Under the pieces are notes generated by a model. The model was not told the origin of the DNA. It did no database searches and saw only the letters and a list, made by a program, of their open reading frames with translations. The translations under genes were made by a program, and so were the position numbers. Below are positions 16,276 through 40,336 of a stretch of 64,000 bases of DNA, in pieces (positions within the stretch are counted from its first letter, which is position 1; each line of letters begins with the position of its first letter). This stretch comes from Octopus sinensis (taxonomy: Eukaryota), in NCBI RefSeq assembly GCF_006345805.1, contig NC_043017.1, forward strand, positions 5,518,001 to 5,582,000. Direction: 5' to 3'.

Positions 16276-16399
16276 AAACCATGTCTGTGCTTCAGTTAAT
16301 TATTCTAATATTCTATTATCAAAGAGATTAGATTTTTTTTATTATCGGTCTAAGTATTTTAATTTCATTATATACTTGGCCATATCTGCATTGTTAAAC

Positions 16400-16485
16400 T
16401 GGACAGGTGTCTTCTACTATAACCTCAGGCCAACCAATGCCTTGTGAGTGGATTTGGTAGACGGAAACTGAAAGAAGCCTGTCGT

Positions 16486-16531
<46 letters not shown>

Positions 16532-16725
16532 ATGTATATATTTGTGTGTTTGTCCCTCCACTATCGCTTGATAACCGATCTTGGTCTGTTTACATCCCCA
16601 TAACTTAGCAAAAGTGACTGATAGAACAAGTGCCAGGCTTACAAAGAATAAGTCCGGGGGACGATTTCTTCAACTAAAAGGCTGTGCTCCAGCATGGCCA
16701 CAGTCAAAATGACCGAAAAGAGTAA
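16400..16725 (+). mobile_element. SINE family A, 5'-truncated
   Basis: gtgtcttctactataacctc...ccagcatggccacagtcaaaatgaccgaaa, colinear with 8210-8505. Confidence 0.8.
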
Positions 16726-17123
16726 TGGATAATTTCACTAAGTAAGGGAAATGTATGTGCCAAGCAAACATGAAATATAATGACTAGAAAAACTAAGTTA
16801 ACTTTCTAGTCAATTATGTCCACAGACTATTTTTGATTTCCATTTATAGATATTTACTGAATGAAGAATATAAATAAACATCACACAATCTAAAGTTGTT
16901 CACTCTTTCTATCACATCTTGCATCATAAGTAAAAACAAAATCAATACATACCTGCATACACACGCACATATACACACATTAATTTCTAATATAGATAGT
17001 AGACCTCAAATTTTGAGGCATTTGTATAGTTGATTATTTTATATTATCTACATTGTGAAAGGCAAAGTCAACTATGGTAAGAGCCCTACTTCTCCTACCA
17101 AGTTACTGCCCTTTATTTAAATG

Positions 17124-17965
17124 TATTGGGTTGGCCAGTATGTTTGTTCAGTTTTTATCAACACTAAACTTCAAACATTCTAATAAATAGCTAACTTCAG
17201 TCTGTCCCTTGTACAAGTATTAGATACTTAATACTACAAAGTAGTTCAACACAAATTTGCGACAGGGCAAGCTGTATTCTATCTGCTAGGGATTGCCTTG
17301 AAGATGAAAAGCAAAAAAATGGTCATTATCAACATGGCATGCTTTTCTATTTTTAAAAAAGCAAGAGAGCAGCAGAAACCTGCAGAAGGATAGTCACTGT
17401 GATGGACAATATGAAGCAAAAAATGATGATGGGGGAACCACAACAAACAACCTCCAAAGCAGAAATTCAGCTGAAGGTTATGCTTTCAATTTGGTGGTAT
17501 CGAAAGGATGTCTTTTACAAGCTTTTTCCCATAGACAGGGCCATCAATTCAGATGTGTACTGTAACGAGCTGGACTAATTAATGCATTGAACCATCAGAA
17601 ACATCCAACACCTGCTAATTGTAAGGGCATTGTCCTTCAAGACAACAATGGCAGACCACACACATCTTTGTAGATGTGACAGAAGTTACTGGGGCTTGAC
17701 TAGAAAGTTTTGTCACACCTTCCATATTTGCCTAATCTTGTGCCTTGAGATTTCCATCAACTTCTATCTCTTAAAATTCTTTGAATGGAAATACCTTCAA
17801 CTCTTCAGAATTGAAGGTCTGCCCATTCTGAGAATACAAAAAACTTCACCTGGAAAAATTTTTTTCGACAGTAAAGACAAAAAATTCTAAGAGCAGGGAT
17901 GTCTGCCCACATGATGGCAGGAGATAGTGGAACAAAATGGCAATTATATCATTGATTGAATAATT
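17124..17965 (+). mobile_element. Internally deleted, decayed mariner-like DNA transposon
   Basis: Begins tattgggttggcc (mariner TIR-like). Broken frame KVMLSIWW...INSDVYCNELD...QDNNGRPH...YLPNLVP*DFH...WQEIVEQNGNYIID corresponds to the mariner HDNARPH, YSPDLAPSD and C-terminal motifs. Confidence 0.85.
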
Positions 17966-18244
17966 CATTTTGTATTTTGATTTAATATCCACTTTTCCAT
18001 GCTTGCATGGATGGGTCAGACGAAATTTATTAAGGTAGATTTTTAAAAAATAGATGCCCTTCCGATTGCCAACCCTCTTGTTTCCTTCCAAGCAAGGTTA
18101 ATATTCCCCTGTGGCCTGATATTTTTCACTAAACAAATGATACTACATCTTATGTAGTGTCGTTTATTTCCAATCTTCTGTGCTGCTCATCTACAACTAT
18201 TATGTAATGTCAACTGAAGGAGACATAAATACACCCATACACAC

Positions 18245-18400
18245 ACCCGGTTTCTTTCACTTTCTCTCTACCAAATCCACTCATAAAGCTTTGGTAAACC
18301 CAGGACTACAGTAGAAGACATTTGCCCAAGGTGCCACGCAGGACTGAACCCAAAACCACATGGCTGTAAGGCAATCTTCTTAATTACAGCCATACCTGCA
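18245..18400 (-). mobile_element. SINE family A, 5' half
   Basis: ctaccaaatccactcataaagctttgg...ttgcccaaggtgccacgcaggactgaaccc. Confidence 0.75.
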
Positions 18401-18553
18401 CCTATACGTGTGTGTGTGTTGAAATCTATATGTTCAATTGTTTCTTCAGTAATATATGTGGAGATAGGGAGGTATTTATGTAGAAACTAGGAAAATATCT
18501 GTTATTGAAATAAATAATAGATTCAGGGGCTAAAACTGTTAGGCGTGCATATA

Positions 18554-18596
<43 letters not shown>

Positions 18597-18664
18597 AATA
18601 AAATAGAATATATGCATATATATAAACATATATGTACGTACCTACCTCTACATGTACATATACA

Positions 18665-18719
<55 letters not shown>

Positions 18720-19934
18720 AGAGAGAGAGAGAGACGGTGTTGTAATTTTAGAGGCAGTTTTATACGATGCTGGATATAGTATGATAGATTTATAGGTAAT
18801 TATGCAATAATAATTCAGTAGAGATGGTAAATTTGAAGTCACTAATACTGAGGGTAGACAACTGGAATGAATATGTAGATTAATAGGAGGGAGTTTAGGG
18901 TGTATTTTTTGAAAAATGCTAATACTATAATAATTAGAGGAAAAAAGGGAGTAATAGTAAAAGGAGAAACGGGCATACAGGAAATGTATGATTGTGAATA
19001 TGTGAGAGGAAAAGGGAGAATGTGTATGACTGTAAAGGAGAGGGAAGTATGAGCTGAGATTAAATGAGAGGGAGACGTGGAGAGAGAAAAGGGAGAGCTT
19101 GAAATAAAAACTGAGGGAGTTAAGGAGAAATAGGAAAGAGAGAAGGGAATGTGTTGGAATAGAAGAGGGTGCGGTGACGCACAAGAGTGTATTGGAACAG
19201 GCAGGGGTCATAAATATATAGGTATTCTATATGCATACATAACACAATACGGGATTGGCTAGCGAAAAATATAGGGAAATGGTACTTGGGAATTGGGGAG
19301 GGAGGATAGATAGGGAGACACGACAGAGTGATTTAAGAGATGTAGGGCAACAACAGAAAGAGATTGAGAAATATGGGGGGAAAGTGAAAGGAATGAGCCA
19401 AAAAGGGAGCGAGACAAGTAAAAGAGGAAAGAAGGACGAGAAGAGTGAGGAGCGGGTAAGGGTAAAAAAATAGAGAAAATAAAGGGAAAGAGAGAAAGGA
19501 AATTGTGAAGAGAAAAGAGGGAGTTGGACGAAAAAAGGAGGAAGCAGCAACAACAGGAACAGCAAGAATGACGATGGTGTGGGGGAGTAGCTGCTAGTGG
19601 TGGTGATAGTAGTAGTAGTAGTAGTAGCAGTAGTAGTATAGTAGTAGTAGTAGTAGTAGTAGCAGCAGCAGCAGTAGTAGTAGACAAACATGCATAATAG
19701 CTTACAGGGAGCCCATGTAAGAAGCAGAGTACCACAACAGCATATCAGCAGTGGCAGTCAAAGCAGCGCCGACTGCTGCTGCTGTTGGCTGAGACGGCAC
19801 AGCCGATGATTGCACCGGTAACTGGCGTGTGTGCATGTGTGTACGTACGTATGTGTGTGTGTGTGTGTGTGTGCGAGCGTGCGTGAGCTGAAGCTGCTGC
19901 TGCTGCAGCCGTTGACGGCAGTGGCACAATAAAG

Positions 19935-19956
19935 AAAACTGGGTCAGCTAAGGTTA
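19935..19956 (+). promoter_or_regulatory. RORE/Rev-erb-type site overlapping a DR4-like pair
   Basis: AAAACTGGGTCA fits WAWNTRGGTCA; continues GGGTCA-gcta-AGGTTA. Motif match only. Confidence 0.35.
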
Positions 19957-22900
19957 TATAGTTGCGAAAGAGGTTTATCATTGGCGGAGAAGTGTGTCTA
20001 TCGATGTGCACTTGAGTCAGCAGCAGCAGTAAACAGCGACGCCAACACCACCGGCCTAGCATCACCACCACTGCCACGATCGGCAGCAAGCAGCAGCATC
20101 AGCATCATTATTATCATCATCGCCATCATAATAATCAACAGCATCATCGCTGTAATCGCCAGGTCATTGACAACATGGATCGAACCAGCCAGTAGCAAAA
20201 TGTCCTTTCGAAAGAGAGGAGGAGAAATGTGAGGGTAGAAGAAAAGAGAAATAAAAGATGTGGCATGAAAGAGAGGAAAATGGTAGATGAGAAAGAAATA
20301 TAGGCATCGGCGGAAGGGAGGCGGGGGTTGAGAGAAGAGACAGTGGATTGTTTTCTTCAAAAGATTTATTGATCTCCGTTGTTTATCCAACTTGAGATAC
20401 GTTTACTCACTCTTTCTCTCCCTGTTGTTTCCTATATATATCGACACGCGTGCTTCATTAGTCTCTTTCTCTCTCTCTCCCTCCTTATTGCTCGAATTTC
20501 TTTCTACACTCGTCAGCTTGTTTGTCTTTGTGTCGGTGTCTAGTTTTTACCGTCTCCCAGTGTCAGTCTGTCCGACTGAAAATATGTACTAAGTGGAGGA
20601 CAGATATCTGCTCCCGCTCTCTCACATAATCTTCTAAATTTCTTGGCTCACGACATCAAGTAATGCTAATACCAACTTTATTATTAATATTTTTTACACA
20701 GCAGGCATTCTTGAGTATTCTGTCCCAATTAATCTTATCACTGCCTATCTACCATCTTCTTTGTTATATATTTTGCCCCGTCCGTCTATTTATGTTACAG
20801 CAGAATCGTTAGTGTCACAGAGCGAGAGAGAAAGAGAGAAATGCCTTTTAGTGTTTATTTACGGACCTGTACGTTCATAGTTCAAATCTTTTTGAGCTCA
20901 GTTTCGCGATTCATCCTTCCGAGGTTGATAAAGTACCGGTCAAGTACTAGAGGCGATATTTATTCCTGTAAAGCATTATTGATATGAATGGGAGTCTATC
21001 TACTGTATAGTGTTATACTTGAAGTATTTCAATCCTTTCGTGTACGGCTGTTGGGGTTTTCTATTTTATTTTTCTTTGTTTTTATATCTACCTGCTTATC
21101 CACTGCCCACCCCCTTTTGCCAGTCAGCCTGTTAAGCTTATCCTTCTGTAGCTAATTTCTTTCCTACTCCCTTTTCCTCTATACCAAGCATTACGTAGAT
21201 AAGGGAAGGGGACGTACGCACATGCAAGTATGTATCTGAGTAACGCACACGCTTATTTAATCAAATCTGTATATCTGTTTGTACGGTTGCGTACACATGC
21301 CCGTATATAATAGATACGTGTGAAGGTGGGCAAGACACACGAATGTGTGCTTAAGGCTAATAGTGCACTTGTTTGAGCAAGGAAACTAAAAGCCTGCTAC
21401 CATCCCACATCCTCTCGTATTTTTTTATATATTACAAAATTAAACAAGGGGAGGTTGGAGGAGTAGAAAGGGCAAGAGAAAAAGAATTGAACAGCAATCT
21501 ACACACAAACAGATACAGCTAAATAAAATATGGATAGGTTAGTTACACCGTACAGTTTTTTTCATAGAAAAAACTGTAACTGATATTAGATACACATAGA
21601 TGTGTGTGCGCGCGCGTCCTAAGGCAAGGGCGTGCACATGAGTGCAGGCTTTTCTACTACTTGAATTACATTCATGTCGGGTATGCCTTATATATATATA
21701 TATATTTATATTTATATTTATATAGTTAGCGCTTGACTGATATTTCATTGTATCAGTCCCGGAAATACGAAAAGTGAGGCTGACTTGCGCGAGATTTGAA
21801 CCCAGAAAGTAAAGGGCTGTAAACTAAATACCAACAAGCAATCTGTCCGACTTCAGCTTTCGCTCATTTACATTTTAGCTTTGTATGTTTGAACACACAC
21901 ACACGTAAGCACGCGCGGCAATTTTGAGAAATGTGTGCGCGTGCGTGTGTATGTATGTATGCTTGTGTGCGCGCGCGCCTCATTTAACGGTTGCCCCTGT
22001 TGCTTCTCAGCATTTTTAATATATACTCCCATTGCTGTAGCTATGTGTCAGTCAGTCAGTAGGACAGACACTCACTGTGTAAAGTGTACTTGCAGAGGGA
22101 ATATGACTGATCAATGCCTCTTCTCTTTCTGTCTCTTTCTCTTTCCATCAGGAATGAGGTAAAGAGAAGGAAGGTAAGGTTGTGGTGACGACCGACCAAT
22201 AAAAGTGGGAGAAGAAGAAGAAAGACTATGTGTGTGTATGTATATATATATATATTATATATATATATATGTCTGTGTATACATATACACACACACATTA
22301 TACAGCATGCAGAGAGAAGAGAGAGAGAAAAGAAATGATAAAGGTGTAAGAAATTTTAAGTGACGATGACAGCGGCGGCGGCAGCTGCGAGGAATGCCGG
22401 GGCGTTTATAGAGAGACTACGGAAGTGTGTGTGTGTGTGTGTGTGTGTGTCGACAAAGAAGCAACCAGACAGACACACACTACGATTTCTTTTTCAGGAA
22501 ATTAGAAAACAGCTTAAAGTTTGCCCTTCGGTTGAAATCTAAACAACTCCAGTTTGCGATTCCTAATCGCAGTTATTTGACTTATACTATAATAAATAAA
22601 TGCTTTTTCAAAATTAAAATCAGACGCCTCAGTTTCATTTTCTCTTATAAACATTTAAAAAAATAAACAAATAAAGAAGAAAAAAAAAGAGCGTCATCGT
22701 TCTGCAAGGTTAACTCTGTGGCGAATCGAATCCGTGACCTGATTCCGAACTTTAGTTGTAGCAACAAAACTTGCATCACTTCCTGTGCTGTCTATCAAGA
22801 CAAACAACTACAATGGCTCTTTTTTTTTTTTTTTTTTCCCCTCCTATTTCGCTGAAGAGTAAAAGCGAGTTGAAATATTAGACTTTCTCCTCAGCAAGGC

Positions 22901-23227
22901 AACTGAACTAACTTATTCGACATTCTGCAAACTCTTTTTACGTAAGAAGAGCTTGCAGAATTGCCCACTTTTCACTTTTTTTTTTCCGAAACAATATATA
23001 AATTATGAAAAAAAAAGAAATCCTCTATGCTATGTGAAGAGGTACGTGAAAAAAAATGTCGTTTTTCTATAACTTTCACACCGAATTTAAAGCGAAATTG
23101 ATTTTTTTTTCTTTCTTAATATTAATGATAGCATTAAAGCATTTATTTACATACCGCAGACATACTTTCAAGGGGTTACTCAAAACGGGTCTAAATATTC
23201 TACGTAATGTATACTTGTGTGCGTATG

Positions 23228-23264
<37 letters not shown>

Positions 23265-23759
23265 AACAACAAAAGTCAAAAGGATGTACACGGTGAATAT
23301 ATCAGGTTGGCGCAGTTTAAAGAAAAAAGAGGGTGTGTGACGTTTCGAGCATGGCTCTTCGTCGGAAAGAGGAAAGGTCCGGAGAGAAGGAAAAGAATAG
23401 TCGGAGAAAATATTTTATATATATATATAATATATATATATAATATATATATATATTATATATATATATATATAAAAACACACACATATACGCGTACACG
23501 CATGGAGAAGATTATATAGTTTCACATAGTAAGGGAAAATAGAAAGGGCTATAAAGATGATGTTGAAAACAAGTGAGTAACCAAGTCTTTCAGAGAAACG
23601 GATGCATGTACCTGAAGCAAAAAACACCCTACTTGAACGAATAGGAAAGAGGGCCGAACGGGAATTGGTGAACGTGTCACTGTGTAAATAAATATAAAAA
23701 TAGACTGCAGTTCTTGTCGTAGGATAGTTGAATTTAATAAACCATGTCATCCAGCAGTA

Positions 23760-24410
23760 GACATCAAAGTATCCTCCAGTGGGGCCATGCCAATCTTGTT
23801 CCAGTTAGCAGAAAAAAGACTACTTATATATAAAAAAAACACCAATGCACCCCACCCCTCTTAAAAATAAGTAGCACTCAACTAGAAACCTCACAGTCGC
23901 ACTAAATGTAGGGCTTCAATATCACCGAGGACTCGCCAGGCGCTTTACAAAGCTCACACGAGGCCTACAACAGAGTACTAACCCCCACATCAAGGACAAT
24001 GTTGCAGCTGTACACATCTACATTCTAGACTGCAAGCAAGGGCCAGTCGGCCGACAGGTATACAAATACAAACAGTCTCTGGCCCATAAAAAGTGCTGTC
24101 TTCTCTATCTGCCATTTCCGCCACCATGCTAATAGTTTCTGTTCCAGGGAGATGGCTGTCTCCCGACCGCCCCGCTTGGACAATCCTGAGTCACTCGTCT
24201 CACCCCTCTCATCGATCACGTTGCGTTCAATACCCAAGCCCAGGCCCTGCAGTACAGTATCCACTATACTTTGTCCTTCTTCCTCAGGACATGGTCCTAC
24301 TGGAATCTTTTTCCTTGCTCATTTTTTTCATGCAAATTTTAATTTGGAACAGGGCTGCGAAGGCCATCGTCACTGACAGCTCCTTCCTCCAGACCCAGCA
24401 AGTAATACAC
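23760..24410 (-). mobile_element. Possible decayed Tx1-like LINE 3' region
   Basis: GC-richer, coding-like block with CP..GQSIVDTVLQ and AWWRKWQIEKTALFMGQ.LFVF, loosely resembling Tx1-like ORF2 C-termini; no decisive motif. Confidence 0.3.
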
Positions 24411-24564
24411 ACACACTAAGACATTATGTGTGTGTGTGTTTCAGAACTGTGTTAGGTGAGTTCTACACCAGGTTATTAGTCTCGCAATGCCTAAGCGAAT
24501 TATATACATACACATATATTCTATATACAAATACATACATACATACATATATATATATATATAC

Positions 24565-24638
<74 letters not shown>

Positions 24639-24752
24639 ATATACCGGAGTAAGCACATAAATGTGAAACAAGGTGGTAAAAAGAGTACTCAAAATACTCA
24701 AAATATGTTTTATTTAAAAGTAGCAGAAATGTTTCTGCTACTTAAAAATAAA

Positions 24753-24792
<40 letters not shown>

Positions 24793-24834
24793 TTTATTTT
24801 TAAGTATATATATATATATACATTTTATTTTTAA

Positions 24835-24872
<38 letters not shown>

Positions 24873-25113
24873 TTATGTGTATATATATATACATACATAC
24901 ACACTCACACAGACGACAGATGGATTGGCTGGCTGTTAGGTAGCCAAGAATGATGGAAGTCGCGTACAGTATTATTATAGTGATGGGTGTACAACGGCAA
25001 AGTCATTGTGGAAATCTTACTTCTTACATCATACTTGGCTGCTGGCTTTTTTTTCATTTTTTTTTTATCTCCCGCTCTCTTTGCACATTGGCCTCATTCT
25101 TTCTTGTCACATC

Positions 25114-25165
<52 letters not shown>

Positions 25166-26049
25166 GTATTTAACCTCCGCCTCTTCCCTCTTTATGATTT
25201 TTTTTTCTCCCTCTCCGTCTTAATTTCATGGTACTTCCTCGATTTATCTATAGCTTTCCTCACTAATCCCTCATATCTTTGTCTTTGACTACTATCGCCT
25301 GTCTGTCTCTATGCACGTATTTATGTATGCATGTGTTACTACTATAGTTATTGTGCTTGCCGTTTTCTCATTCCTTTGTTACCGTTAAGTTTGTCAATCC
25401 TTCGTCTTTTTCGTTTTATTTCCATCTTCTCTTTCCCCCTCTCCCCTGTTACATTTACCTGCTTCTTTCCTATGCATGCTCCCTCTTATTCTATCCTTCT
25501 CATTTCTCCCTGCTATTCCTCTCTCTTTTCCCTAGTTTTTGTGTCTGTTTCTCTTCAGGTATCACACCTCACTCACACGACTTTCCTCATTTCTCCCATA
25601 TTTCTCGCCATCAACCTCTTTAGCACCCATGTAATTATTATTTCCTATTATTATATCACTTATCATTTTTTTCTTAATAGCGCACTCTAATATTTTCGTT
25701 GTATATATTCTCGTCATCTCTCTTTTTCGCTACATCCGATTTGTCTTTTTCTCGTGTTCTTTCCTAAGAACTGTTGTTGCTATTGTTATTGTTATAACCA
25801 TAATGATGTCGATAGTGGACTTGCTGTTTACGTTGTGAAAATCAGCAAATCCAACCTGAAAATGCATGCCCTACCATCCACCTGATCGTTACTATTTCAA
25901 ACACACACACACACGGTGTATGCCAAGTACCCTACCCCTATTTTTCTTAGCTTCTGTTAATATTAGTCTCCTGTTTTCTCTTCCTTTCTTCTCTCATAGC
26001 TAATCTAAACACTGGAATAATTTCCTTATCCTTAATTTTTTAAACGAAG

Positions 26050-26410
26050 CAATTTAGAGTAAAATATTTAACAGGAACTCTGCTCGACCTGTGTTGTTCA
26101 TGCCTTTTCCAGAAGCATTGGTGATGTAATCAAACTGTTGTGAACGGGAAATAAGACCGAGACCCGACTTGTTAAGAACCAAGGTCACTGACAAAGCATG
26201 CCTATCCATCAAAGGCATTCAAGCTATGATGAAAAGAGGAAGAAGGTCGACACATTCGATTTCTCAATATCGAAACTTTCCATACCCTCCATCACAGAGC
26301 AACCAGTCAAAAGTCTGGGAGAGTTCTTTGAATTAATTGTAAAAGACTTTGCTGATGTTCAAAAATTCAAAAAGACCTTAAAGTACATTATTAAAAAGTC
26401 GTCGAGTTAA
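26050..26410 (+). mobile_element. Non-LTR retrotransposon RT fragment (Hero/NeSL-like)
   Basis: IPSITEQPVKSLGEFF resembles the IPTxxEKPVKSLGxxF segment of Hero-type RTs; recalled similarity only. Confidence 0.45.
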
Positions 26411-26689
26411 GCCTGCCACATAAATATGCATACGTGTATGAGAGTGTATGTGTGTTTACATAAATTTGATTCAGATATAAATAGAAACATTATTGTTTCT
26501 AAATCTCTCAAGAAATTATATTCAGTAACAGTACTTTATGTAAGGGCACAGATATTGTGCCGTATAGCCATCAGCCAACCGGAAACGACTTTTCCTGTGG
26601 CTAAACAGCAGTAATATTCGTCCCATCCAGGACTGCCACATTATGTTGGCAAACTGTTCTTACTTTGATTTTTATATATATATATATAT

Positions 26690-26860
26690 ATATGACAACC
26701 GATGCTGGTGTGTTTACGTCCCCGTCACTTAGCGGTTCGGCAAAAGAGACCGATAGAATAAGTCCTGGGCTTACAAAGAATAAGTCCCGGGGTCGATTTG
26801 CTCGACTAAAGGCGGTGCTCCAGCATGGCCGCAGTCAAATGACTGAAACAAGTAAAAGAA
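26690..26860 (+). mobile_element. SINE family A, 3' half, CpG-intact
   Basis: gacaaccgatgctggtgtgtttacgtc...ggcggtgctccagcatggccgcagtcaaatgactgaaacaagtaaaag. Confidence 0.85.
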
Positions 26861-27089
26861 AGTAAGAGTATATGGCTTAGTGGTTAAAGTATTCGACTCA
26901 CAATCCTAAGGTCATGAGTTCCTTTTCTGGCAAAAGTGAGTTGTACCTGTAATTCAAAGGATCAGACTTGTCACATTCTGTTTCATGCTGAATCTCCTTA
27001 AGGACTGCGTTAAGGGTACGTGTCTGTGCTCAGCCACATGCACGTTAATCTCGTCGTTGTAACTGACGGAGAGCTAGTTACGTAGGCAG

Positions 27090-27660
27090 ATTCAATCCCT
27101 GAATTTATCAACAATTTATCCTGTCCCAAGACCTGAGGCCTCTGCAGTTTTAAATAGTTCCACAGACAACAGATGTCACCCACAAAAGGACGATCAACTT
27201 TTTCTGCAGACCATTAGAGCGTACCCTCACCCTTAGCAAGGAACCATGTACGGGACCAGTAAATTCTTGCACTTTTCACACAGGCCTCATTGAAGGATTT
27301 GAGATAATGAACAAGATACTTCCTACAATACAGAAACGCCAAACGACCAGGAGTCATCAGATGGCACCAAGGGTAGAAAGAAATGGAAAATAGAGAAAAC
27401 AGTGCATAAGCCAGCGGCCTAAGACAAAAAAAAAAAGAAGCTCGTGAGCATGAAGACAACTGGCAGAGTGGGCTTCGTATATTTCTTAGAACTTCAGGTT
27501 GGCAAACACCAGAGGGAAGTGAGACATCGTCTTAACCATGAGGAGGGGCATAGAATGAGTGAGCAGAACTGTAGGGATTAAGTGGAAGCGAGTACAGACA
27601 AGGTGTGTGCGGTAGTGCAGGATTACTAAATTTCGTCCACTCCAGTTCTTAGTCCAGGTT
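27090..27660 (+). mobile_element. Possible decayed non-LTR retrotransposon fragment
   Basis: GC-richer coding-like stretch with short broken frames, bounded by a SINE and TA; no decisive motif. Confidence 0.25.
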
Positions 27661-27829
27661 GTCTCATATATAAAAAAGACGAAGACAGGTGTGTAAACAA
27701 CAAACAGGTGTATTAGTTTAACGCTCGGGAAGGTGAGAAAGTATCTTACGTTTCGCGCCTACGCTCTTCAACAGAAAGGAACATGAGAAAATAAACAGAG
27801 AATAAAAAAGAATACATATATATATATAT

Positions 27830-27891
27830 ATTCTTTTGTTTCAGTCATTTGACTGGAGCCATGCTGGAACACCGCTTTTAGTCGAATAACC

Positions 27892-27931
<40 letters not shown>

Positions 27932-28075
27932 GACAATCTTCTTTCCGTTTCCGTCAACCAAATCCATTCACAAGACTTTAGCTGGCCCGCGGCTATAGTA
28001 GAAGGCACTTGCCCAACGTGCCACACAGTGGGACTGAGCCCGGAACCATGTGGTTGCGAAGAAAACTTCTTGCCA
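27830..28075 (-). mobile_element. SINE family A, internally deleted
   Basis: Tail tttcagtcatttgactgg.gccatgctgg and head ttgcccaacgtgccacacagtgggactgagcccggaaccatgtgg. Confidence 0.8.
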
Positions 28076-28179
28076 TATATGTGTGTGTGTGTGTGTGTGT
28101 TTATACATAAATACATACACACGCAAAAAAATTCAAATTGGAGAAACATCCTACACTTAGATCCCTGGATTTTACCCTT

Positions 28180-28234
<55 letters not shown>

Positions 28235-28948
28235 TGTGTACATACATAGATGCATATACATATACATCCAAACATTGATATGTATAAACGCATACATACT
28301 TATGTATTTATATGTATATATTTACACACACATATGTGAAAGATATAAAAGATTTTATACGAACTATTATTAATAAGTTAGGAAGTCATATGACAATAAA
28401 TTTATTTAGTACAAATATATGTACATTTGAAAGAACACATTTACTTTTATTTAAAACCGTTAAAATATATTTGCTATTTTCTCATATATTACACGGTTTA
28501 TATGATGAAACAAATCGACATTAACTTACGTTCACAACAGTTTCCCGTTTTTACAGAATAATAGAGATCTATGCCTTTTTTTTTTCTTTCTTTTTGCTGA
28601 TGCTGAATCAATTTAAGAAAAGAAAATGTACAAATACGGTAACAGCAATCGATTTACCAGTTTTGAAATTTCACTTATATCCACGCACACGGCTTATACG
28701 TGAGGTGAAACTATAAATCATTGTGGACTATCTTTATAATATATACATACATATCTATATGCTGAGTGTATGAGCATTTGTTTGCGTTTATGTGTACGTG
28801 TGTGTGTACACATGTGTATGTATGTATGCATGTATACACATGTGTGTATGTATGTATATAATATGCATATATGTATATATATATTATATGTATATATATG
28901 TCTGTATGTATATATATATGTGTGTGTGTGTGCATGTATATACGTATG

Positions 28949-28985
<37 letters not shown>

Positions 28986-30149
28986 TTGAGCGAGTGAATG
29001 AACGCAATAAAAAGTTCGTTCCATTACGTAAAATATTATTACCATACTTCAAAAATATACTTTTAACGTATTTCCTAGTTTATATTGAACTTGAAAAACA
29101 CTTTCCGTATTGAAAAGAACTATCGTAGCTCTCATTTTACATTATAATACTTATTTTTATATCAGACCTCTTTAACTCTAAGCCAACTGTAAACTTCTAA
29201 ATATATATCGTACACAAGAAATATCCAAACAATTATGCTTTATGGTGTTAAAGTCGATGCTGCCAAATTTGCAGAGATCTGGCATCTTTTTTCTAAAAAT
29301 TTCTACCATTTTCCCGTTAACTTTACAGTCTACTGTCTTTTGTATTTTCATTCATATGCAAGAACCCCGAAAACGCTATCCTGACATGTTAGCGACACAT
29401 GTCAAATCCAGTGGTTAATTCTCCATCAAATCACAACCATGTCTCATCTTAAATACAAATGTCGGTGTCGATGTGGGACTATTTCCACTGAAAGAAACTT
29501 AACCATTCCTCAGCGAAGCTTTACCAAACTCTGAACGTGGGGAGCGGGTAGATGCAGCTTAGAATAATGCATGAGCCCCCCAGAATTCTTGTGATCGAGG
29601 TTCCTTTGGAGTAAAACAAGGATGAGGCAAAAAAATAGATGTGAAGAAACTGGAAGTTATAAAGGAGTAGGAGTTTAGTGGTATTGAGTGTGAGGAGTAG
29701 ACAGAAACATTAGTTTGTCATACTGACTTCTGCTTTTCTCCTTCAGTCGTATTTAAATCTGTCTCGTTCACACGCTCTTTCACATTCATTTTTCAGTGTG
29801 TGTGTGTGTGTGTGTGTGTGTACAGGGAGAGACAGTGAGAGAGTACATTTAGAACGTCGTCGTTATTAATATTCCACGTTCAAAAGCCATTGTTATGGCG
29901 TCAATTAGAGGAAGGAAACTTAACTTCACCGAAAAGCAACCATGTTTTAACAGTCTTTCATCGCGTGACTATCGGGTTGGGTTACATGACATCGTCATGC
30001 AAAACGCATGTAACACTTATTGTTAAAACAATGATATATCTTTCTATACTGTTCAGAAGGAAATCCCTTGTTCACTCTTTTGCTTAGCCTAGCATCATAA
30101 AAAAACTCTGTCTGGTGAAGGGATATCCTCAGTCATCGGCTATTGAAAG

Positions 30150-32260
30150 TCGATCTGATCATCTGCGACCTGGTGTCGCTTTCGGTTTAACTTAAGAATT
30201 GGACTTGGTATTTTCTTAGTTGATTACTAGCTCTAGAAATGTTTTGTAATCTCTCTCTCTCTTTTTTTTTTTTAACTACCAGCGATATATTTCTTTTCTT
30301 CAGTATTATATGTTGGGCTTGTCGTTGTGGTGTGTTACGCAAGTTTAGGAACGTATCAAAAAGGAAGCATCAGTACCAAAAGATATTACTAAAGGTGTTC
30401 TTGTCTGTCGTCTCATCAAGCCGACGAGATTTGCTTTTTGCCAGCTTGTGCAGTCGACCAGTAATTGAATAGTAATTTTGATAGAGGCATCGAAAGATCC
30501 AAATTGTTTTTAACTCCAATTTTCACAGTCTTTATCATTCTTTTAAGCTGAGCATAAGACACTAAGCTATCCATCCTAACAATGTCTCAACGCAGAAATT
30601 TACAGCATTATTGGAAACCAACTTATGTGGAACCTCATTCCTTGCAAAATTAGTTGATCGCTGTTTTTAGCAAATCGTTCATTAAACTCTGAGGACTTTT
30701 TAGTCAACCTGAAGTATAAGGAGCATGACCGTGATCCATATGTGCATTTGTATGGTTTTCGATTGGCTTCAGTAACTTCTGGCATGGGTTTAATCTGACA
30801 GCGTTTAGGGATTCCCGACATATTCAGGCGACCATGCTTCGAGTCGCACTCTATTTCTAGTAATGCCTCAATGAACGTCATCATGTACAGTTTTGATGCA
30901 AATCTGTTGCAAAACCACTGGAACAACTTCACCTTTGCAAACGATTTCATTATCATCATTGAATTATAGGGTCTCTCACTTATTGAGTAATTATTCCATC
31001 TATTCGTCTTGATGACCCCATACACTTGCTAGCTTCCGATATACGGAGCTTTTAACTGGTAGCACTTTCATGTGCAAGTTGTTTGCAAGACATTACCCAA
31101 AATTACATTATTCTTTGTTTCAGTTTGTAATTCTATTTTCAACACACCCGATTCCACCTTATAAATAATGCCACCGTTGTGCTTTTGACTTTGTAGGCTC
31201 ATTAAATTTATTTCTAGACAGAGCATCAACTATGGTTAAAAGCATTTAAATGGATTGCCCACTGTAATATTCTTGCAGATTTCCTTTAGGGGATTCTCTT
31301 CTGGGACTGAATATAAACTCCAAGGGGTTATGGTTACTTCTCAAGAAAAATGTTTGTCCTTATAAAAATTATCGGGCTTTTTGCATAATTTGCAAAGAGC
31401 CCAATAATTGTGTTTATGGAGCTCAAGCTCTATAGTGATTTACATATTTGTGCAGATTACAAGTTGGGAGTAAATATGTTCTGATATTTACTGTTCACCG
31501 AACCTGAAACAGCATTACGCGAGTTGGCATGTACGAGAGGCTTTGACGATTGTTCAGACAAGCGCCAAAGCCTCCATTGCAATATTAAAATAGTTACTTT
31601 GAAGTTCAAATAGCCATCGTAATAAATATAGAACTGGATTTCTGAGACAGTGCACCAGATATTGAAATGTTGACTAGTATCAGTTAGTGACTAAAACCTT
31701 TTTTGTTGTATCAAATATCTGAAGTAAGCGATACGGCTAAATATATCTTAAATATTTCAAACAGATCAGTGTGTTCCTTCTTCAATAAAAACGTAGAGTG
31801 CTTTTTTCGTAAGTTTGAAAATCTACTGACTTTTAACGATTATGCGGGAATAAATCGACCATAAAAATTAGTCATTCTCCAAAATGATTCCAATTCTTTC
31901 CTACTATCTGGGAATTTTAGGTTCAATATCTTCTTCATTAACGCATCGTCTGTTTGGAGAACTTATATCCTAGGAAGGTCAATTCTTCTGCACGAAAAAA
32001 CACTTCTTTTCGTTAATAGTTGTACCACGAGAGAAAAGGTTTCGCAGAATTGCTTTTACTTTCTGCTCTAAGTCATCACTGGTGGACCACCGATGCAAAT
32101 GTCATTTTGATGAATTGTAATACCGATGGCACTTAATACATTTTCCATGCCACACTGAAATATAGTGTTTGCTGTTTTTATAGTGTATGGCAGACATGTC
32201 CAATGCAATAATCCAAAGGAAGAACATACTGATATTTTCAGACTTTCATCCATATCTGGA
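30150..32260 (-). mobile_element. Heavily decayed Ty3/Gypsy pol relic (RT, RNase H, integrase)
   Basis: Fragments GLLHWTCLPYTIKTANTIFQCGMENVL..HQNDICIGG (RT), NEKKCFFRAEELTFLGY (RT), ARILQWAIHLNAF..DALSR (RNase H), FLNLRNTP (integrase), in Gypsy order along the minus strand with many frameshifts. Confidence 0.8.
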
Positions 32261-32353
32261 ATGGAAGTTTCCCCTAAAATATTTCATACATACATGTGCA
32301 TGTATATATATATATGTGTGTGTATTTGTAAAATCTTTTGCATACATATGTAC

Positions 32354-32384
<31 letters not shown>

Positions 32385-32704
32385 CATAAAATTATGGTAT
32401 ATTCTATTAAGAACGTAGTATAGTACGGTATAAAGCTCGTTCACCTTCAAATTTCATCCTGTGCTATCCAGTAGTAGTATTATACGTACTTCCAGGTTTG
32501 CGTTTGGGTATCTGTCGTAGTTGAATAGATAATTGAAAATATTTAGAGTGAACAAGAAGTACAGTTAGACATTTATTTTCTATCACTACAATTGTTTCCA
32601 CGCAACGTAGTTCTCCAGGCGTGCAGATACCGGAGAACTATGTTACGTGGAAGCAGTTGTAGTGATAGAGAATAAATGTCCAACCTTACTCCTTCTCGTT
32701 GCAA

Positions 32705-32725
32705 TTATAAATATATTATATATAT

Positions 32726-32777
<52 letters not shown>

Positions 32778-32991
32778 TACATACATACATACATATAATA
32801 TATATATACATATAGATATATACATACATATATACGTATATATATACATACATATATACATATATATATATACATACATATAAATATATATATACACACA
32901 CATATTCATACATATATACATATATATACATGCATACATATATATATATATATACATACATACATACATATATACGTATATATATACATAC

Positions 32992-33022
<31 letters not shown>

Positions 33023-33121
33023 AATATATATACACATACATATAAATATATATACATACATATAAATATATATACATACATATAAATATATATACATACA
33101 TATAAATATATATACACATAC

Positions 33122-33172
<51 letters not shown>

Positions 33173-33486
33173 CATACATAAATACATACATATATACATA
33201 CATACATACATACATATATACATACATACATATATACATATATACATACATATATACATACATATATATATATACATATATATATATATACATACATATA
33301 ATAAAAGGTGAAACTAATTAATTAGGGATAATTATCAATTATACCAAGTAGATTTCAGCATGTAAAAGCCCCATTCGAGGAAAATTTAAGTAATACTAAG
33401 TAATATTACTTAGTATTACTTAAATTATACATACATATATATATATACATACATATATATATACATACATATATATATATACATAC

Positions 33487-33517
<31 letters not shown>

Positions 33518-33523
33518 CATACA

Positions 33524-33590
<67 letters not shown>

Positions 33591-33806
33591 CATATATATA
33601 TATACATACATATATATATATATACATACATATATTATATACATACATATATATATACATAATATATATATATACATACATAATATATATATACATACAT
33701 ATATATATATACATACATTATATATACATACATATATATATATATACATACATATATATATACATATATACATATATATATATATATACATATATATAAT
33801 ATATAC

Positions 33807-33839
<33 letters not shown>

Positions 33840-33928
33840 CATATATATACACATATATATATACACACATATATACATACATACATATATACATATATAT
33901 ACACATATATATACATATATATACATAT

Positions 33929-33975
<47 letters not shown>

Positions 33976-34055
33976 CATACACATATACATACACATATAT
34001 ATACATATATATATATACACATACATATATACAGATATATATACATGTATATATA
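32705..34055. repeat. Two large (TA)n/(TACA)n arrays separated by a ~125-bp non-repetitive insert
   Basis: Direct reading; arrays ~32705-33300 and ~33425-34055. Confidence 0.95.
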
Positions 34056-35089
34056 TTGCTCGATTAAAGGCGGTACTCCAGCATGGCCGCAGTCAAACGA
34101 CTGAAACAAGTAAAAAGAGTAATATATACACACATATACAGAATATATGTAAATACAAACACACACACACACATATATATACACATAGACATATCTAAAT
34201 AAATAAATACAAACTTACACACAAATTAAAAAGGATATTTTGATTTGCTGTGCGTTTCGCGGCACTTCTTTCAATACGGATGATATTCTTTTTGTTTGCC
34301 GTGGATACGCCAACGTTTATAGCATTTCACGCATGCACATACACACACACACACACACACACATCATCTCACAAAATGCACGAACATCACTCCATACTTC
34401 TTTTGCCAGACGTAGTTCCCAACAGACGCACACAAATTTTATTGTGTTACATACATATACAAACAACTCCACTCCAACCACTATCTGATGTTACGAGTCT
34501 ATCAGCGTGCAAAATACAGGCAAAACAAAGAAACATACACACACGCACACGCACGCGAAAATCTATGCACACTAGCTCAAATGCTATTGCTATAGGCATG
34601 CATGCGCTATTAACCCTCCACCCATCGTCATATGTAATTCTTTCCTATATCTATCTGCACCTCCAGCTCCCTATAATCATCAGTTGCTATCTATCGTCCA
34701 CTCAACTAACTACAAATTTATCTGGTTATTTATGGAGGCAAGCAGAGGGATTACTGTTTTGGTTCTAATAGTAGTTTCCTTTTTCTATACGCTATGTGTG
34801 TATGTATCTCACACACATGTACATAAGCATGTATGTATTTGTGTGTCAATACACACACACGTCGAGTTTATTTTTTGTGTGTATTGTTCTTATTGCTACT
34901 TGGTATTACTATAATTATTATTATCACACTTTTGGTAACTTGTCCCTGTAATGCTCCCCTCAAATTGTTGCCCTTGTGGCAATAAAATATATTATTATCA
35001 TTATCATTATTGTTATTATTATTATTATTATCATTATTATTATCATTATCATTATTATTATTATCATTATTAATGGGCGTTTAAAAACA

Positions 35090-35460
35090 AGCCCACAGAA
35101 GGCGGTTGGTGATGGCTGAGTGTGGGCGTGGAAGAGTTTTGCATGGCATCAGGTGTTATGTGGCGCTGCTGGTGGGGGGGTGGGGTTAGAGCGAAAGGGA
35201 AAACGTGCAAAAAGAGAAAGAGGAGGGTTCAGTGTGGGTTTGCACACGCGCATGTGTAGGGCGGGTATGGTGTCTTTGAAATATTTTTGGGAGCCGCTCA
35301 TTCTTTCGGGGTGGAGGAGGAAGAGTGGGGTGCAATGAAAATTTCTGGAGAAAGTCAGTTTTGCTATTTTCTTTAGCTGCAGTAGAGAACGGGGGAGGGG
35401 GGCGAGGAAAAGGAGCGGCGAGGAAACAAAGAAGAAACTGATGCGAGGGAATAACAGAAA
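35090..35460. promoter_or_regulatory. GC/CpG-rich promoter-like segment
   Basis: GC boxes gggcgtgg (35124) and gggcggg (35259), NRF1-like gcacacgcgcatgtg (35242); lies at the CpG-rich/CpG-poor boundary. Confidence 0.4.
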
Positions 35461-35750
35461 GTGAAAGACAAAGGAATAGGGACAGATAGGAAAGAAATAT
35501 CAGAAAGAGAGAGACAGACAGACAGACAGACAGTGATTGAAAATGAAGTAGACTGAGAAGAAAGAGAGAAGAAATGTTTGTAAGAACAAGTGAAAATAGG
35601 AAAAGGGAACTACAGACTGAGTCTTAAGGAGATAAAAGATGCAACAGTGAAAGGTAAAAGAAATGGCAGACAATATAAGCTGAGGCTGGCTAGCCAGTAG
35701 TAGTAGCAGTAGTAGTAGTAGTAGTAGTAGTAGCAGCAGCAGTGGTGGTG

Positions 35751-35781
<31 letters not shown>

Positions 35782-36399
35782 CAGAAGGAAGAGGAAAGAC
35801 AGTCAGTTTAATTAACCCTTGAAGTTGTTATTTAGCCCCAGGTCAGCTCTGGCTGATCAGGCCTGCAATGAAAGTATTTTTTAGTTTTATGCCATCCAAA
35901 TTTAAGGAACTGCAATATACTTTGTTTGCTTGACATGCTAGATATACCAGTGACATTTCTCTCTCAAACTGCACCCTGCCATATAGAAAAGGTAGAGGCA
36001 CACTGGATAACGTAATGCTAACTTGGAAATTGACCTGAAATGTAATTTCTAATAGAAGTTCTCAGTATGAGCCATGTTTTGGACTCAAATAGAGAACCTA
36101 ATGTAGTTACATCAAAGAAATGTGAGTGAAAATTTGATAAACAAACTGTATGGAAGCCCATAAAAAGACCATTCCAGTCCTTTAACCATGTCTTTGATTT
36201 GAGAATAAGTTCTCCACTTCTTGCTACTTGTAACAGTGATCCTAAAAATGCTTATTGATATTCACCCTTTCTCCTTCTAAGTCATTAAAAATGTATTCTA
36301 GATATCTCAACTAAATATTACTGGGTGAGATAACAATCTCCCTCAAATTATACACTGCTGTTTTAAATAGAAAAAAAAAAAAAGAACTCTAGAAATATT

Positions 36400-36600
36400 G
36401 GTTTCAAATTTTGGCACAGGGTCTGGCATTTTCAGAGGAGGGAGTAGGTTGATTACATCAACCCTGGTGCTCAACTGGTACTTACTTAATCAACCCTGAA
36501 AGGATGAAAGGCAAGGTCCCCTAACTTAGATTGTAAGGACAGATGAAATGCTGTTAAGCATTTTGCCCAGCGCACTAACAATTCTGCCAGCTCACCGCCT
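36400..36600 (-). mobile_element. SINE family B, degenerate
   Basis: caactggtacttacttaatcaaccctgaaaggatgaaaggcaagg...ctaacaattctgccagctcaccgcc. Confidence 0.75.
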
Positions 36601-37290
36601 TGAACTCATTGAATATTGATGACCAAGACATTCAGCCAGGAAAAAAAAAAGAAAGGGTGGGTTGTCATGGCTGGAGTGCCTATAATCATAGGACTGTTGA
36701 ATCAGGGCTGACATGGGTGCATCAACAAATGTAAGAAATACCAAAGAGTAGTACTTTAAACTACAGGAGTCGACTGTTTGCAACAATTAAGATGCTTTTT
36801 TTCAACTAAACAAAGTCAGTGTTCACAGAGGAGTGGGATTATCAATGATTAAAGTGACCCCAATATATTACTGATAAATGTGTGACATATAGGACTATGT
36901 GAAATAAAAGCAAATATTTAAGCTGTCCAAGGACATTGGTGATGCTCTAACAGAGATCTGAAACAGAGTTTTGATCTTGATTTGTAGAGATTTCACAATT
37001 TAAACATCAATGTGCTCACTCAACACTTACCAACAGTGCCATCATTTAGAATGTTAACAACAGTATTTTTTAAAAAAAGAAAAAGAGAAGTTGTGATGAG
37101 GAAGAGAGAGATGGTTCATGTATGTGATTATATACATGCGTGTGTATGTGTTTATATACATGTGTGTACGTGTACACAAACGTATATAAACACGCTCATG
37201 TGTGTGCACACATATGACAAGGAGAGGGTGAATGAGACTAGAAAGAAATGAAGAGTAAAAGATTGAGAAAATAAAGAATGAAAGGGATAT

Positions 37291-37327
<37 letters not shown>

Positions 37328-40300: not shown

Positions 40301-40336
<36 letters not shown>

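What the first reader, a model, noticed from the sequence alone, without database searches (positions are those of the whole stretch)
18900..35450. Sharply bounded ~16.5-kb CpG-retaining domain inside a CpG-depleted gene body
Seen (by eye): CG is common from ~18.9 to 35.45 kb and scarce at 5-18 kb and 35.5-64 kb. Internal control: the SINE A 3' half at 26690-26860 keeps 11 CpGs, whereas the copy at 8340-8490 keeps 4, with six changed to TpG/CpA. The otherwise diverged copy at 27830-28075 and the badly decayed Gypsy relic also keep CpGs, so youth alone does not explain it. Established: mollusc methylation is mosaic and mostly in gene bodies, and germline 5mC erodes CpG. Inference: a long-lived unmethylated island within a methylated gene, with promoter-like sequence at both edges. 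It may be an intragenic regulatory hub, a nested transcription unit or a transplanted intergenic block.
Basis: partly seen in the sequence, partly recalled or inferred. Interest (0 to 1): 0.75.

Follow-up and report, generated by a model that had tools for sequence, protein, structure and literature searches.

The report
Unmethylated-looking enclave inside E75 intron
A 17-kb stretch of non-coding DNA inside one intron of an octopod hormone-receptor gene (E75) has kept its CpG sites while the rest of the gene lost about 80% of them. This is the sequence footprint of a gap in germline DNA methylation; it is real and sharply bounded, but it is a variation on the known mosaic methylation of invertebrates.

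Summary
CpG observed/expected is 0.80 in about 18,540-35,450 and 0.18-0.19 in the flanks (425 CpGs against 98 expected, P~1e-131). The flanks show a matching excess of TpG/CpA, and GC content away from CpG sites is unchanged.

The whole window lies inside one minus-strand gene, the E75/NR1D nuclear receptor. Seven exons are colinear with a 1375-aa Argonauta protein (97% identity) and with cephalopod mRNA contigs. The block sits in the 41.3-kb intron between two ligand-binding-domain exons, so "inside a gene body" is correct.

SINE copies of equal age confirm differential CpG decay: 10 of 11 CpGs kept inside the block, against 4/11 and 2/9 outside.

The block holds only microsatellites, SINE fragments and a decayed LTR-retroelement relic. 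I found no coding gene, no known RNA and no terminal repeats. The "promoter-like" edges are common GA-rich low-complexity tracts.

Best reading (about 0.5): a long-standing local gap in germline gene-body methylation, held open by local chromatin or an unannotated non-coding unit. Rivals are a recently arrived or misassembled block (about 0.2) and two separately transcribed germline units (about 0.15). Methylation itself, transcription and synteny could not be tested here. Interest is moderate.

The parts
18540..35450 (.). CpG-retaining block: o/e 0.80, 27.8 CpG/kb (excluding the >1-kb TA array; 5.5/kb in flanks), non-coding
14064..55377 (-). Host intron (41,314 nt) between E75 ligand-binding-domain exons 6 and 7. 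It is CpG-depleted at both ends, over 14.1-18.5 kb and 35.45-55.4 kb.
62774..62880 (-). E75 exon (second half of first zinc finger, [19 protein letters not shown]), AG/GT splice sites
61205..61242 (-). E75 exon (FKKCIAVGMSRD)
58213..58454 (-). E75 exon (AVRFGRVPKSEKARI.., C-terminal extension of the DNA-binding domain, and hinge)
56839..57006 (-). E75 exon (ligand-binding domain, helices 3-5)
55378..55485 (-). E75 exon 6 of this series (AGTFEVLLVRLASLF..), the last exon before the big intron
13937..14063 (-). E75 exon 7 (MNGCGTRGFLLDSMFDFANHF..), the first exon after the big intron
12469..12648 (-). E75 exon 8 (DRPGLRNEEQ..LHSEKLVI). The remaining ~1000 codons (F domain) lie beyond the left end of the window.
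26693..26874 (+). SINE-A 3' half inside the block: 5.7% non-CpG divergence, 10/11 ancestral CpGs kept
27914..28075 (-). SINE-A 5' half inside the block: 15.5% non-CpG divergence, 4/7 ancestral CpGs kept
8137..8526 (+). SINE-A copy outside the block (control): tail 6.3% divergence with 4/11 CpGs kept; head 5.1% with 3/7 kept
18223..18405 (-). SINE-A head about 135 bp outside the left edge: 14.8% divergence, 0/7 CpGs kept. This fixes the left boundary to the right of 18,405.
30400..32300 (-). Badly decayed LTR-retroelement (Gypsy-like) pol relic with many in-frame stops, only a faint RT_RNaseH match, and CpG o/e 0.76-0.78
18897..19683 (+). GA-rich tract plus (AGT)n microsatellite at the left edge (inside the block, CpGs present)
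35307..35781 (+). G/GA-rich tract plus (AGT)n at the right edge. CpG makes up 15 of 40 C-led dinucleotides up to 35,450 and 0 of 24 after it.
19751..20250 (.). Most CpG-dense 500 bp of the block (26 CpGs, GC about 0.50, o/e 0.81). It is the only piece that meets numerical CpG-island criteria and is a candidate promoter, untested.

Best explanation
The block (about 18,540-35,450) is non-coding intronic DNA of the octopod E75/NR1D nuclear-receptor gene. It has stayed free of the germline cytosine methylation that covers the rest of this gene body. In the methylated parts, spontaneous deamination of 5-methylcytosine has turned about four fifths of CpGs into TpG/CpA. In the block this decay has not happened, so CpG sits at the level of unmethylated DNA. 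I judge it most likely that the gap is old and in place. On this reading a local chromatin state shuts out transcription-coupled methylation. That state could be an unannotated promoter with a non-coding transcription unit, or a repressed (Polycomb- or heterochromatin-type) regulatory block. The best promoter candidate is the CpG-dense 19.75-20.25 kb piece. Shown: the CpG step, its reciprocal TpG/CpA signature, the same-age SINE control, the single host gene, and the absence of a coding gene, known RNA or transposon ends. Inferred: the methylation itself, persistence in situ, and what holds the gap open.
For: There is a 4.3-fold CpG step with sharp edges. The flanks have 22.3 fewer CpG per kb and 18.5 more TG+CA per kb, while GC outside CG/TG/CA is equal (0.278 against 0.268) and GpC o/e is about 1. 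SINE copies of equal non-CpG divergence keep 14/18 CpGs inside and 6/27 outside (Fisher P=5e-4). GA-rich tracts, one sequence class, have 27/86 C-led dinucleotides as CpG inside and 4/86 outside. An old LTR relic inside the block still has o/e about 0.77. There is one host gene: seven exons, each present once, colinear on the minus strand with Argonauta P0121 (97%) and with intron-free mRNA contigs L001-L003 of another cephalopod, whose alignments end at my AG/GT splice sites. Published octopus methylomes place 5mC in exons and introns of a subset of genes, with intergenic DNA and TEs low (PMC9476566). In Ciona sperm, methylated and unmethylated domains have sharp boundaries, intronic repeats of methylated genes are passively methylated, and an active promoter placed in such an intron stays unmethylated (PMC3827831). 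In a cnidarian, repressive marks oppose re-methylation of gene bodies (PMC13345969).
Against: No methylation, transcript or chromatin data were available. Persistence in situ is therefore not shown. A block moved in recently from unmethylated DNA would look identical. A known promoter-protected region in Ciona is about 2 kb, not 17 kb. No promoter or RNA was identified in the block. The SINE control rests on two partial copies inside the block.
Confidence: 0.5

Rival explanations
1. Recent arrival. The block is a segment of ordinary unmethylated (intergenic-type) DNA that was inserted or duplicated into the intron very recently. Alternatively it was placed there by an assembly error, and it has not yet had time to lose CpGs.
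For: Young DNA in the same gene body does keep its CpGs. The 701-bp tandem duplication at 43,607-45,007 (2 differences in 700 nt) has o/e 1.08. The decay rate implied by outside SINE copies is about 60% of CpGs lost at about 6% divergence. At that rate the block could have been methylated for at most about 1-3% divergence (my estimate). The A>T strand skew typical of the flanks (0.047, P=2e-6) is not seen in the block (0.016, not significant), as expected if it has not long been part of this transcription unit. Both edges are sharp.
Against: There are no target-site duplications, LTRs, TIRs or significant direct repeats at the edges. No repeat element is split by the block. There are no gaps or Ns. 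Exon order and strand are continuous across the block. The skew difference from the flanks is not significant (Mann-Whitney P=0.057, t-test P=0.25). The block carries the same SINE family, microsatellites and GA tracts as its flanks.
Confidence: 0.2
2. Two germline transcription units. In germ cells the gene is transcribed as an upstream unit ending near 35.5 kb and a downstream unit starting at an internal minus-strand promoter near 19.7-20.3 kb. The block is then functionally intergenic spacer plus promoter. Full-length mRNA would be made only elsewhere, or rarely.
For: The order along the minus strand matches tandem methylated units: methylated body, sharp stop at 35,450, 17 kb unmethylated, densest CpG cluster at 19.75-20.25 kb, and depletion resuming within about 1.2-1.7 kb downstream. 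In Ciona the unmethylated zone around an active promoter runs from about -0.8 to +1 kb (PMC3827831). About 6,500 octopus genes show an unmethylated 5' part and a methylated 3' part (pattern MP3 of PMC9476566), so partial gene-body methylation is common. Strand skew in the block is weak or absent.
Against: The cephalopod mRNA contigs and the Argonauta model join exon 6 directly to exon 7. No isoform starting or ending in this intron is known to me. A product starting at exon 7 would lack the DNA-binding domain and half of the ligand-binding domain. The ATG that opens exon 7 is not conserved, being I in Argonauta and in the other cephalopod. No promoter motif was tested meaningfully; the only scan available is a bacterial sigma-70 scan.
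Confidence: 0.15
3. The block is simply a pile of young transposon insertions that still carry their original CpGs.
For: The young SINE-B and duplication at 43.6-45.0 kb show this effect on a small scale.
Against: The block's recognisable repeats are not young. One SINE fragment is at 15.5% divergence. An LTR pol relic is so decayed that Pfam gives only E=0.023. The inside copy at 5.7% divergence keeps 10/11 CpGs, while outside copies of the same or lower divergence keep 4/11 and 2/9. CpG o/e is uniform (0.67-0.98) over all 1-kb bins, not patchy.
Confidence: 0.03
4. A compositional or recombination effect (GC-biased gene conversion hotspot or local isochore) keeps CpGs, irrespective of methylation.
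For: Raw GC is slightly higher in the block (0.358 against 0.342-0.346).
Against: The GC excess is no larger than the CpG retention itself accounts for. GC at positions outside CG/TG/CA is the same (0.255 against 0.263 overall; 0.278 against 0.268 without the TA arrays). GpC o/e is about 1 in all compartments.
Confidence: 0.02

Closest known systems
Unmethylated domains of mosaic invertebrate methylomes (Ciona sperm domains of Suzuki/Bird; octopus gene-body methylation, Macchi et al. 2022)
   Same: There is a two-state pattern with sharp boundaries, and CpG depletion is confined to the methylated state. Repeats inside a methylated gene decay along with it, as the SINE and mariner relics in the flanks show.
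   Different: Known unmethylated domains are intergenic or cover whole unmethylated genes, and Ciona genes are almost entirely methylated or entirely unmethylated. This one is a 17-kb hole in the middle of one intron, with methylated-looking DNA and exons of the same gene on both sides.
Promoter-protected unmethylated zone inside an intron of a methylated host gene (Ciona transgene line E, PMC3827831)
   Same: An unmethylated island is embedded in a methylated gene body, and the host gene is still expressed.
   Different: That zone is about 2 kb and centred on a demonstrably active promoter. Here the zone is 17 kb and no promoter or transcript is known.
Vertebrate DNA methylation valleys/canyons and CpG islands
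   Same: It is a long hypomethylated stretch (>3.5 kb) at a developmental transcription-factor locus, and CpG o/e is near the unmethylated expectation.
   Different: Valleys cover promoters and whole small genes and are GC-rich. This block is intronic, has 36% GC, is made of repeats and microsatellites, and sits in a genome whose default state is unmethylated.
Partially methylated octopus genes (pattern MP3 of Macchi et al. 2022)
   Same: There is an intragenic switch between unmethylated and methylated states in the same clade.
   Different: MP3 is a single 5'-to-3' switch. Here the pattern is methylated, then unmethylated, then methylated, all within one intron.

Membership tests
Unmethylated domain of a mosaic invertebrate methylome | CpG o/e near the unmethylated expectation, next to CpG-depleted neighbours with TpG/CpA excess | tested here: met
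   o/e 0.80 against 0.18-0.19; TG+CA 133.6/kb against 152.1/kb
Unmethylated domain of a mosaic invertebrate methylome | Sharp boundaries | tested here: met
   Support intervals are 17,980-18,660 and 35,420-35,540. No CpG occurs in 35,445-36,010.
Unmethylated domain of a mosaic invertebrate methylome | Absence of 5mC in germline DNA, measured directly | not testable with these tools
   No bisulfite or nanopore data were available; methylation is inferred from mutational footprints only.
Unmethylated domain of a mosaic invertebrate methylome | Lies outside methylated transcription units (intergenic, or a whole unmethylated gene) | tested here: not met
   It lies inside the 41.3-kb intron of one gene, flanked by its exons 6 and 7.
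CpG island / promoter | Short (0.2-3 kb), GC at or above about 50%, o/e >0.6, at a transcription start | tested here: not met
   The block is 16.9 kb with GC 0.36. Only 19,751-20,250 meets the numerical criteria (GC about 0.50, o/e 0.81). A transcription start could not be tested.
Nested protein-coding gene | Open reading frames with homologues or domains | tested here: not met
   Pfam on all ORFs of at least 40 aa found nothing except a faint TE match. A query of 2,348 aa of block ORFs against 5.8 billion proteins gave no hit at E<=0.001. No nested gene is called in the 136-kb Argonauta orthologue.
Known structured RNA gene or cluster | Match to an Rfam family or a tRNA | tested here: not met
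   There were no matches at gathering score and no tRNA. Sub-threshold hits are all TA/TG microsatellites.
Single large transposon or LTR element insertion | Terminal repeats (LTR/TIR) and target-site duplication at the two ends | tested here: not met
   The edge-to-edge alignment score of 28 is within the range of shuffles (18.3±2.8, max 31). It is no higher than scores against five other GA tracts (16-30).
E75 / NR1D nuclear receptor (host gene) | zf-C4 DNA-binding domain with the RFGRVPK extension, plus ligand-binding domain, colinear with orthologues | tested here: met
   97% identity to Argonauta P0121 over aa 43-366. Best named hits are E75 of molluscs and arthropods, ahead of E78 and Rev-erb.

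The most novel reading that the evidence does not exclude
The block is an actively maintained methylation-free compartment inside a transcribed, methylated gene, and it is conserved among octopods. It would be held open by sequence-encoded boundary or nucleation elements, with the G/GA-rich tracts at both edges as candidates. It would house an unannotated non-coding gene or a Polycomb-type regulatory module of E75. It would then be a natural test case for what sets and stops gene-body methylation in invertebrates.
Probability: 0.12. Interest if true: 0.65.

Novelty: new member of a known kind. Interest (0 to 1): 0.35.

Why it matters
Current models hold that invertebrate gene-body methylation follows transcription across whole units, and that intronic inserts are methylated passively. 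A 17-kb hole in one intron, with equally old repeats decaying outside it and not inside, shows that something local can override that rule over evolutionary time. Alternatively, large blocks may move into introns. The locus is a compact, well-defined place to look for boundary elements, hidden promoters or Polycomb domains in a cephalopod. It lies in a hormone- and clock-related transcription-factor gene. Its weight depends on how common such holes are genome-wide, which is unknown.

Tried and rejected
1. Two tandem nuclear-receptor paralogues with the block as plain intergenic DNA: rejected. Each E75 segment occurs once, in order, and the mRNA contigs join exon 6 to exon 7.

2. Nested coding gene: no Pfam domains and no homologue for 2,348 aa of block ORFs.

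3. Known RNAs: none. E-value-mode hits are microsatellite artefacts of mir-297/466.

4. LTR or direct-repeat ends: BLAST gave a 412-nt, 62% match between the edges. It is not above dinucleotide shuffles or other GA tracts. The exact motif GGGGAGGGRGG occurs only at the two edges, but it was chosen post hoc.

5. GC-biased conversion or isochore: rejected by equal non-CpG GC.

6. Young-TE pile: rejected.

7. Strand-skew test for transcriptional history: inconclusive.

8. Comparative test: the Argonauta locus could not be fetched because the gene range exceeds 100 kb. No cephalopod genomic DNA is reachable with these tools.

9. Passing whole reading frames of the block to Pfam as DNA references failed because of the stop codons, so concatenated ORFs (≥40 aa) were pasted instead.

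10. The sigma-70 promoter scan is irrelevant to a eukaryote and was not used.

11. My first 11-copy SINE alignment mixed non-homologous flank and inflated one divergence value. It was redone on separate head and tail segments.

Full report
**Observation**

The CpG contrast is real and large. In 1-kb bins, CpG observed/expected (o/e) is 0.67-0.98 from 19 to 35 kb. The one exception is a bin that is almost entirely a TA microsatellite. From 5 to 18 kb and from 36 to 64 kb it is 0.00-0.47, apart from one patch at 44-45 kb.

- By compartment, the block has o/e 0.80 with 425 CpGs. The left flank has 0.19, and the right flank 0.18 once the 43.6-45.0 kb patch is removed. GpC, the control dinucleotide, is about 1 everywhere.
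- At the flank rate 97.6 CpGs are expected in the block, giving log10 P = -131.
- A two-boundary likelihood scan puts the edges at 18,540 (support 17,980-18,660) and 35,450 (support 35,420-35,540).
It falls between a CpG-decayed SINE (18,223-18,405) and a TA microsatellite.

**Signature of the depletion**

With the two >1-kb TA arrays removed, the flanks have 22.3 fewer CpG per kb and 18.5 more TG+CA per kb than the block. GC content at positions outside CG/TG/CA is the same, 0.278 against 0.268. This is what deamination of 5-methylcytosine produces. It is not what an isochore or a GC-biased conversion hotspot would produce.

Adding the flanks' CpG to their TG+CA excess gives about 24 per kb, close to the block's 27.8. 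Block and flanks therefore probably started from similar CpG densities.

**Internal control**

| Segment | Copy | Position relative to block | Non-CpG divergence | Ancestral CpGs kept |
|---|---|---|---|---|
| Tail | 26,693-26,874 | inside | 5.7% | 10/11 |
| Tail | 8,344-8,526 | outside | 6.3% | 4/11 |
| Tail | 7,189-7,332 | outside | 1.1% | 2/9 |
| Tail | three older copies | outside | 22-25% | 0 |
| Head | 27,914-28,075 | inside | 15.5% | 4/7 |
| Head | 18,223-18,405 | outside | 14.8% | 0/7 |

Pooling the same-age copies gives 14/18 inside against 6/27 outside (P=5e-4).

A second control of the same kind comes from the GA-rich tracts that recur in the window. CpG makes up 27 of 86 C-led dinucleotides in the tracts inside the block and 4 of 86 outside. 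An LTR-retroelement pol relic at about 30.4-32.3 kb is so decayed that Pfam sees only a faint RT_RNaseH match (E=0.023). It still has o/e about 0.77. By contrast, a mariner transposase relic 1 kb outside the left edge has o/e 0.06-0.18. Youth of the inserts therefore does not explain the block.

**The host gene**

Stop-to-stop ORFs on the minus strand revealed nuclear-receptor motifs. A search with the joined exons found E75/NR1D orthologues. A longer query brought in a 1375-aa Argonauta hians protein at 97% identity and an 82%-identical cephalopod protein.

- tblastn places seven segments (aa 43-366) on the minus strand at 62.9, 61.2, 58.4, 57.0, 55.4, 14.0 and 12.6 kb. Each occurs once and they are in order.
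- All seven have AG/GT splice sites.
- The 82%-identical protein is encoded without interruption on 4.5-4.9-kb contigs from several sequencing runs, so these are mRNA. Their nucleotide alignments to the window stop exactly at my exon ends.
- This is one gene, not two tandem paralogues. The block lies in the 41,314-nt intron between two ligand-binding-domain exons, 4.5 kb from exon 7 and 19.9 kb from exon 6.
- The roughly 1000 C-terminal codons are not in the window, so the entire window is intragenic.

**Contents of the block**

I found no sign of a gene.

- Pfam on all non-repetitive ORFs of at least 40 aa gave nothing beyond the TE trace.
- A query of 2,348 aa of block ORFs had no homologue at E<=0.001 among 5.8 billion proteins.
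- Rfam and tRNA scans were empty, and sub-threshold hits were microsatellite artefacts.
- The 136-kb Argonauta orthologue has no nested gene called.
- The recognisable content is microsatellites (eight TA-type arrays, one of them 1.35 kb), two SINE fragments, the LTR relic and GA/CT-rich tracts.

**The edges**

Both edges carry a GA-rich tract followed by an (AGT)n microsatellite, in the same orientation. BLAST aligns them over 412 nt at 62% identity. The local alignment score of 28 is within the range of dinucleotide shuffles (18.3±2.8, maximum 31). It is also no better than either edge scores against five other purine- or pyrimidine-rich tracts in the window (16-30).

I therefore reject LTRs or direct repeats, and I see no basis for calling the edges promoter-like. 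The exact motif GGGGAGGGRGG occurs only at 19,295 and 35,392, but it was derived from that alignment and carries no weight.

**Interpretation**

Published octopus methylomes place 5mC in the exons and introns of a subset of genes. Intergenic DNA and transposons are largely unmethylated, and the patterns are stable across tissues (PMC9476566). In Ciona sperm, methylated and unmethylated domains have sharp boundaries. Repeats in introns of methylated genes are passively methylated, and an active promoter inserted into such an intron keeps about 2 kb unmethylated (PMC3827831). In a cnidarian, gene-body methylation follows transcription-coupled marks and is opposed by repressive marks (PMC13345969).

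Against this background, the flanks behave as a methylated gene body and the block behaves as default unmethylated DNA. The unusual point is its position, in the middle of one intron.

**Ranking the explanations**

1. In-situ, long-standing gap held open by local chromatin, meaning an unannotated promoter with a non-coding unit or a repressed regulatory block: about 0.5. The 500 bp at 19,751-20,250 (26 CpGs, GC about 0.50) is the best promoter candidate.
2. Recent arrival or misassembly: about 0.2.
   - Young DNA in this gene does keep its CpGs. The 701-bp tandem duplication at 43,607-45,007 shows this, with two differences in 700 nt.
   - From the decay seen in outside SINE copies, I estimate the block cannot have been methylated for longer than about 1-3% divergence.
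   - Against it: there are no insertion hallmarks, no split repeat and no gaps.
3. Two germline transcription units, with an internal minus-strand promoter near 20 kb: about 0.15. The layout along the minus strand fits, but the mRNAs join the exons across the block.
4. Young-TE accumulation and biased gene conversion are contradicted by the data.

A strand-skew test gave only a hint. The flanks have A>T skew of 0.047 (P=2e-6) and the block 0.016 (not different from zero). The difference between them is not significant.

**Limits**

- Methylation is inferred, not measured.
- No transcript, chromatin or population data exist here.
- No cephalopod genomic DNA other than the window could be read.
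- The SINE control has only two partial copies inside the block.
- How common such intragenic gaps are in cephalopod genomes is unknown. One of the four published octopus gene methylation patterns (MP3, about 6,500 transcripts) already has an unmethylated 5' third and a methylated 3' end, so intragenic switches as such are not rare.

**Verdict**

This is a real, statistically overwhelming and correctly located feature. It is best read as a gap in germline gene-body methylation inside an E75 intron. It belongs to the known mosaic-methylation phenomenon, in an uncommon position. Interest is moderate until methylomes, transcripts and synteny are checked.

Noticed in passing
window 43607-45007: A 701-bp unit is present twice in tandem with only 2 differences in 700 nt. 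It carries a young SINE-B copy with intact CpGs. This is the only CpG-rich patch (o/e 1.08) in the right flank. It could be a very recent duplication or an assembly stutter.
   Followed up: partly
window 1216-1872 (+) and 3989-4887 (-): Two LINE relics lie in inverted orientation around an AT-rich satellite (2.5-3.7 kb). The first matches Pfam RVT_1 (6.8e-11); the second is a typical LINE C-terminal tail. CpG o/e is 0.4-0.8, so they are younger inserts in the same gene body.
   Followed up: partly
window 17357-17600 (+): A mariner-type transposase relic (PF01359, 2.5e-10) lies about 1 kb outside the block's left edge and is CpG-depleted (o/e 0.06-0.18). It serves as a useful old-TE contrast to the LTR relic inside the block.
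   Followed up: partly
window 32706-34056 and 42569-43630: There are two (TA/TACA)n arrays longer than 1 kb, one inside the block and one outside. The outside one has 22- and 70-bp higher-order periodicity. TA-type microsatellites are about three times denser in the block (8 in 17 kb) than in the rest of the window (7 in 47 kb).
   Followed up: no
window 19295 and 35392 (+): The exact G-rich motif GGGGAGGGRGG occurs only twice in 64 kb, once at each edge of the block and on the same strand, each time about 300 bp upstream of an (AGT)n array. The motif was chosen post hoc from the edge alignment, so its significance is unknown.
   Followed up: partly
window 36380-36644, 43976-44194, 44677-44896, 48812-49276, 55067-55262: A second SINE family (SINE-B) has copies only in the right flank. 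The old copies read GTTGATTACATCAACCC where the young ones read GTCGATTATATCGACCC, another visible case of CpG decay in the flank.
   Followed up: no
window 14061-14063 (-), first codon of E75 exon 7: Exon 7 opens with ATG (M), where the Argonauta protein and the other cephalopod have I (QINGCG / HINGCG). It would be the first codon available to any transcript starting in the big intron, but it is not conserved.
   Followed up: no
(tool behaviour): A 285-aa query to the search for homologous proteins returned no target longer than 499 aa. Tripling the query length brought in the 1375-aa cephalopod orthologues. The tool appears to cap target length at about 1.75 times the query length.
   Followed up: yes
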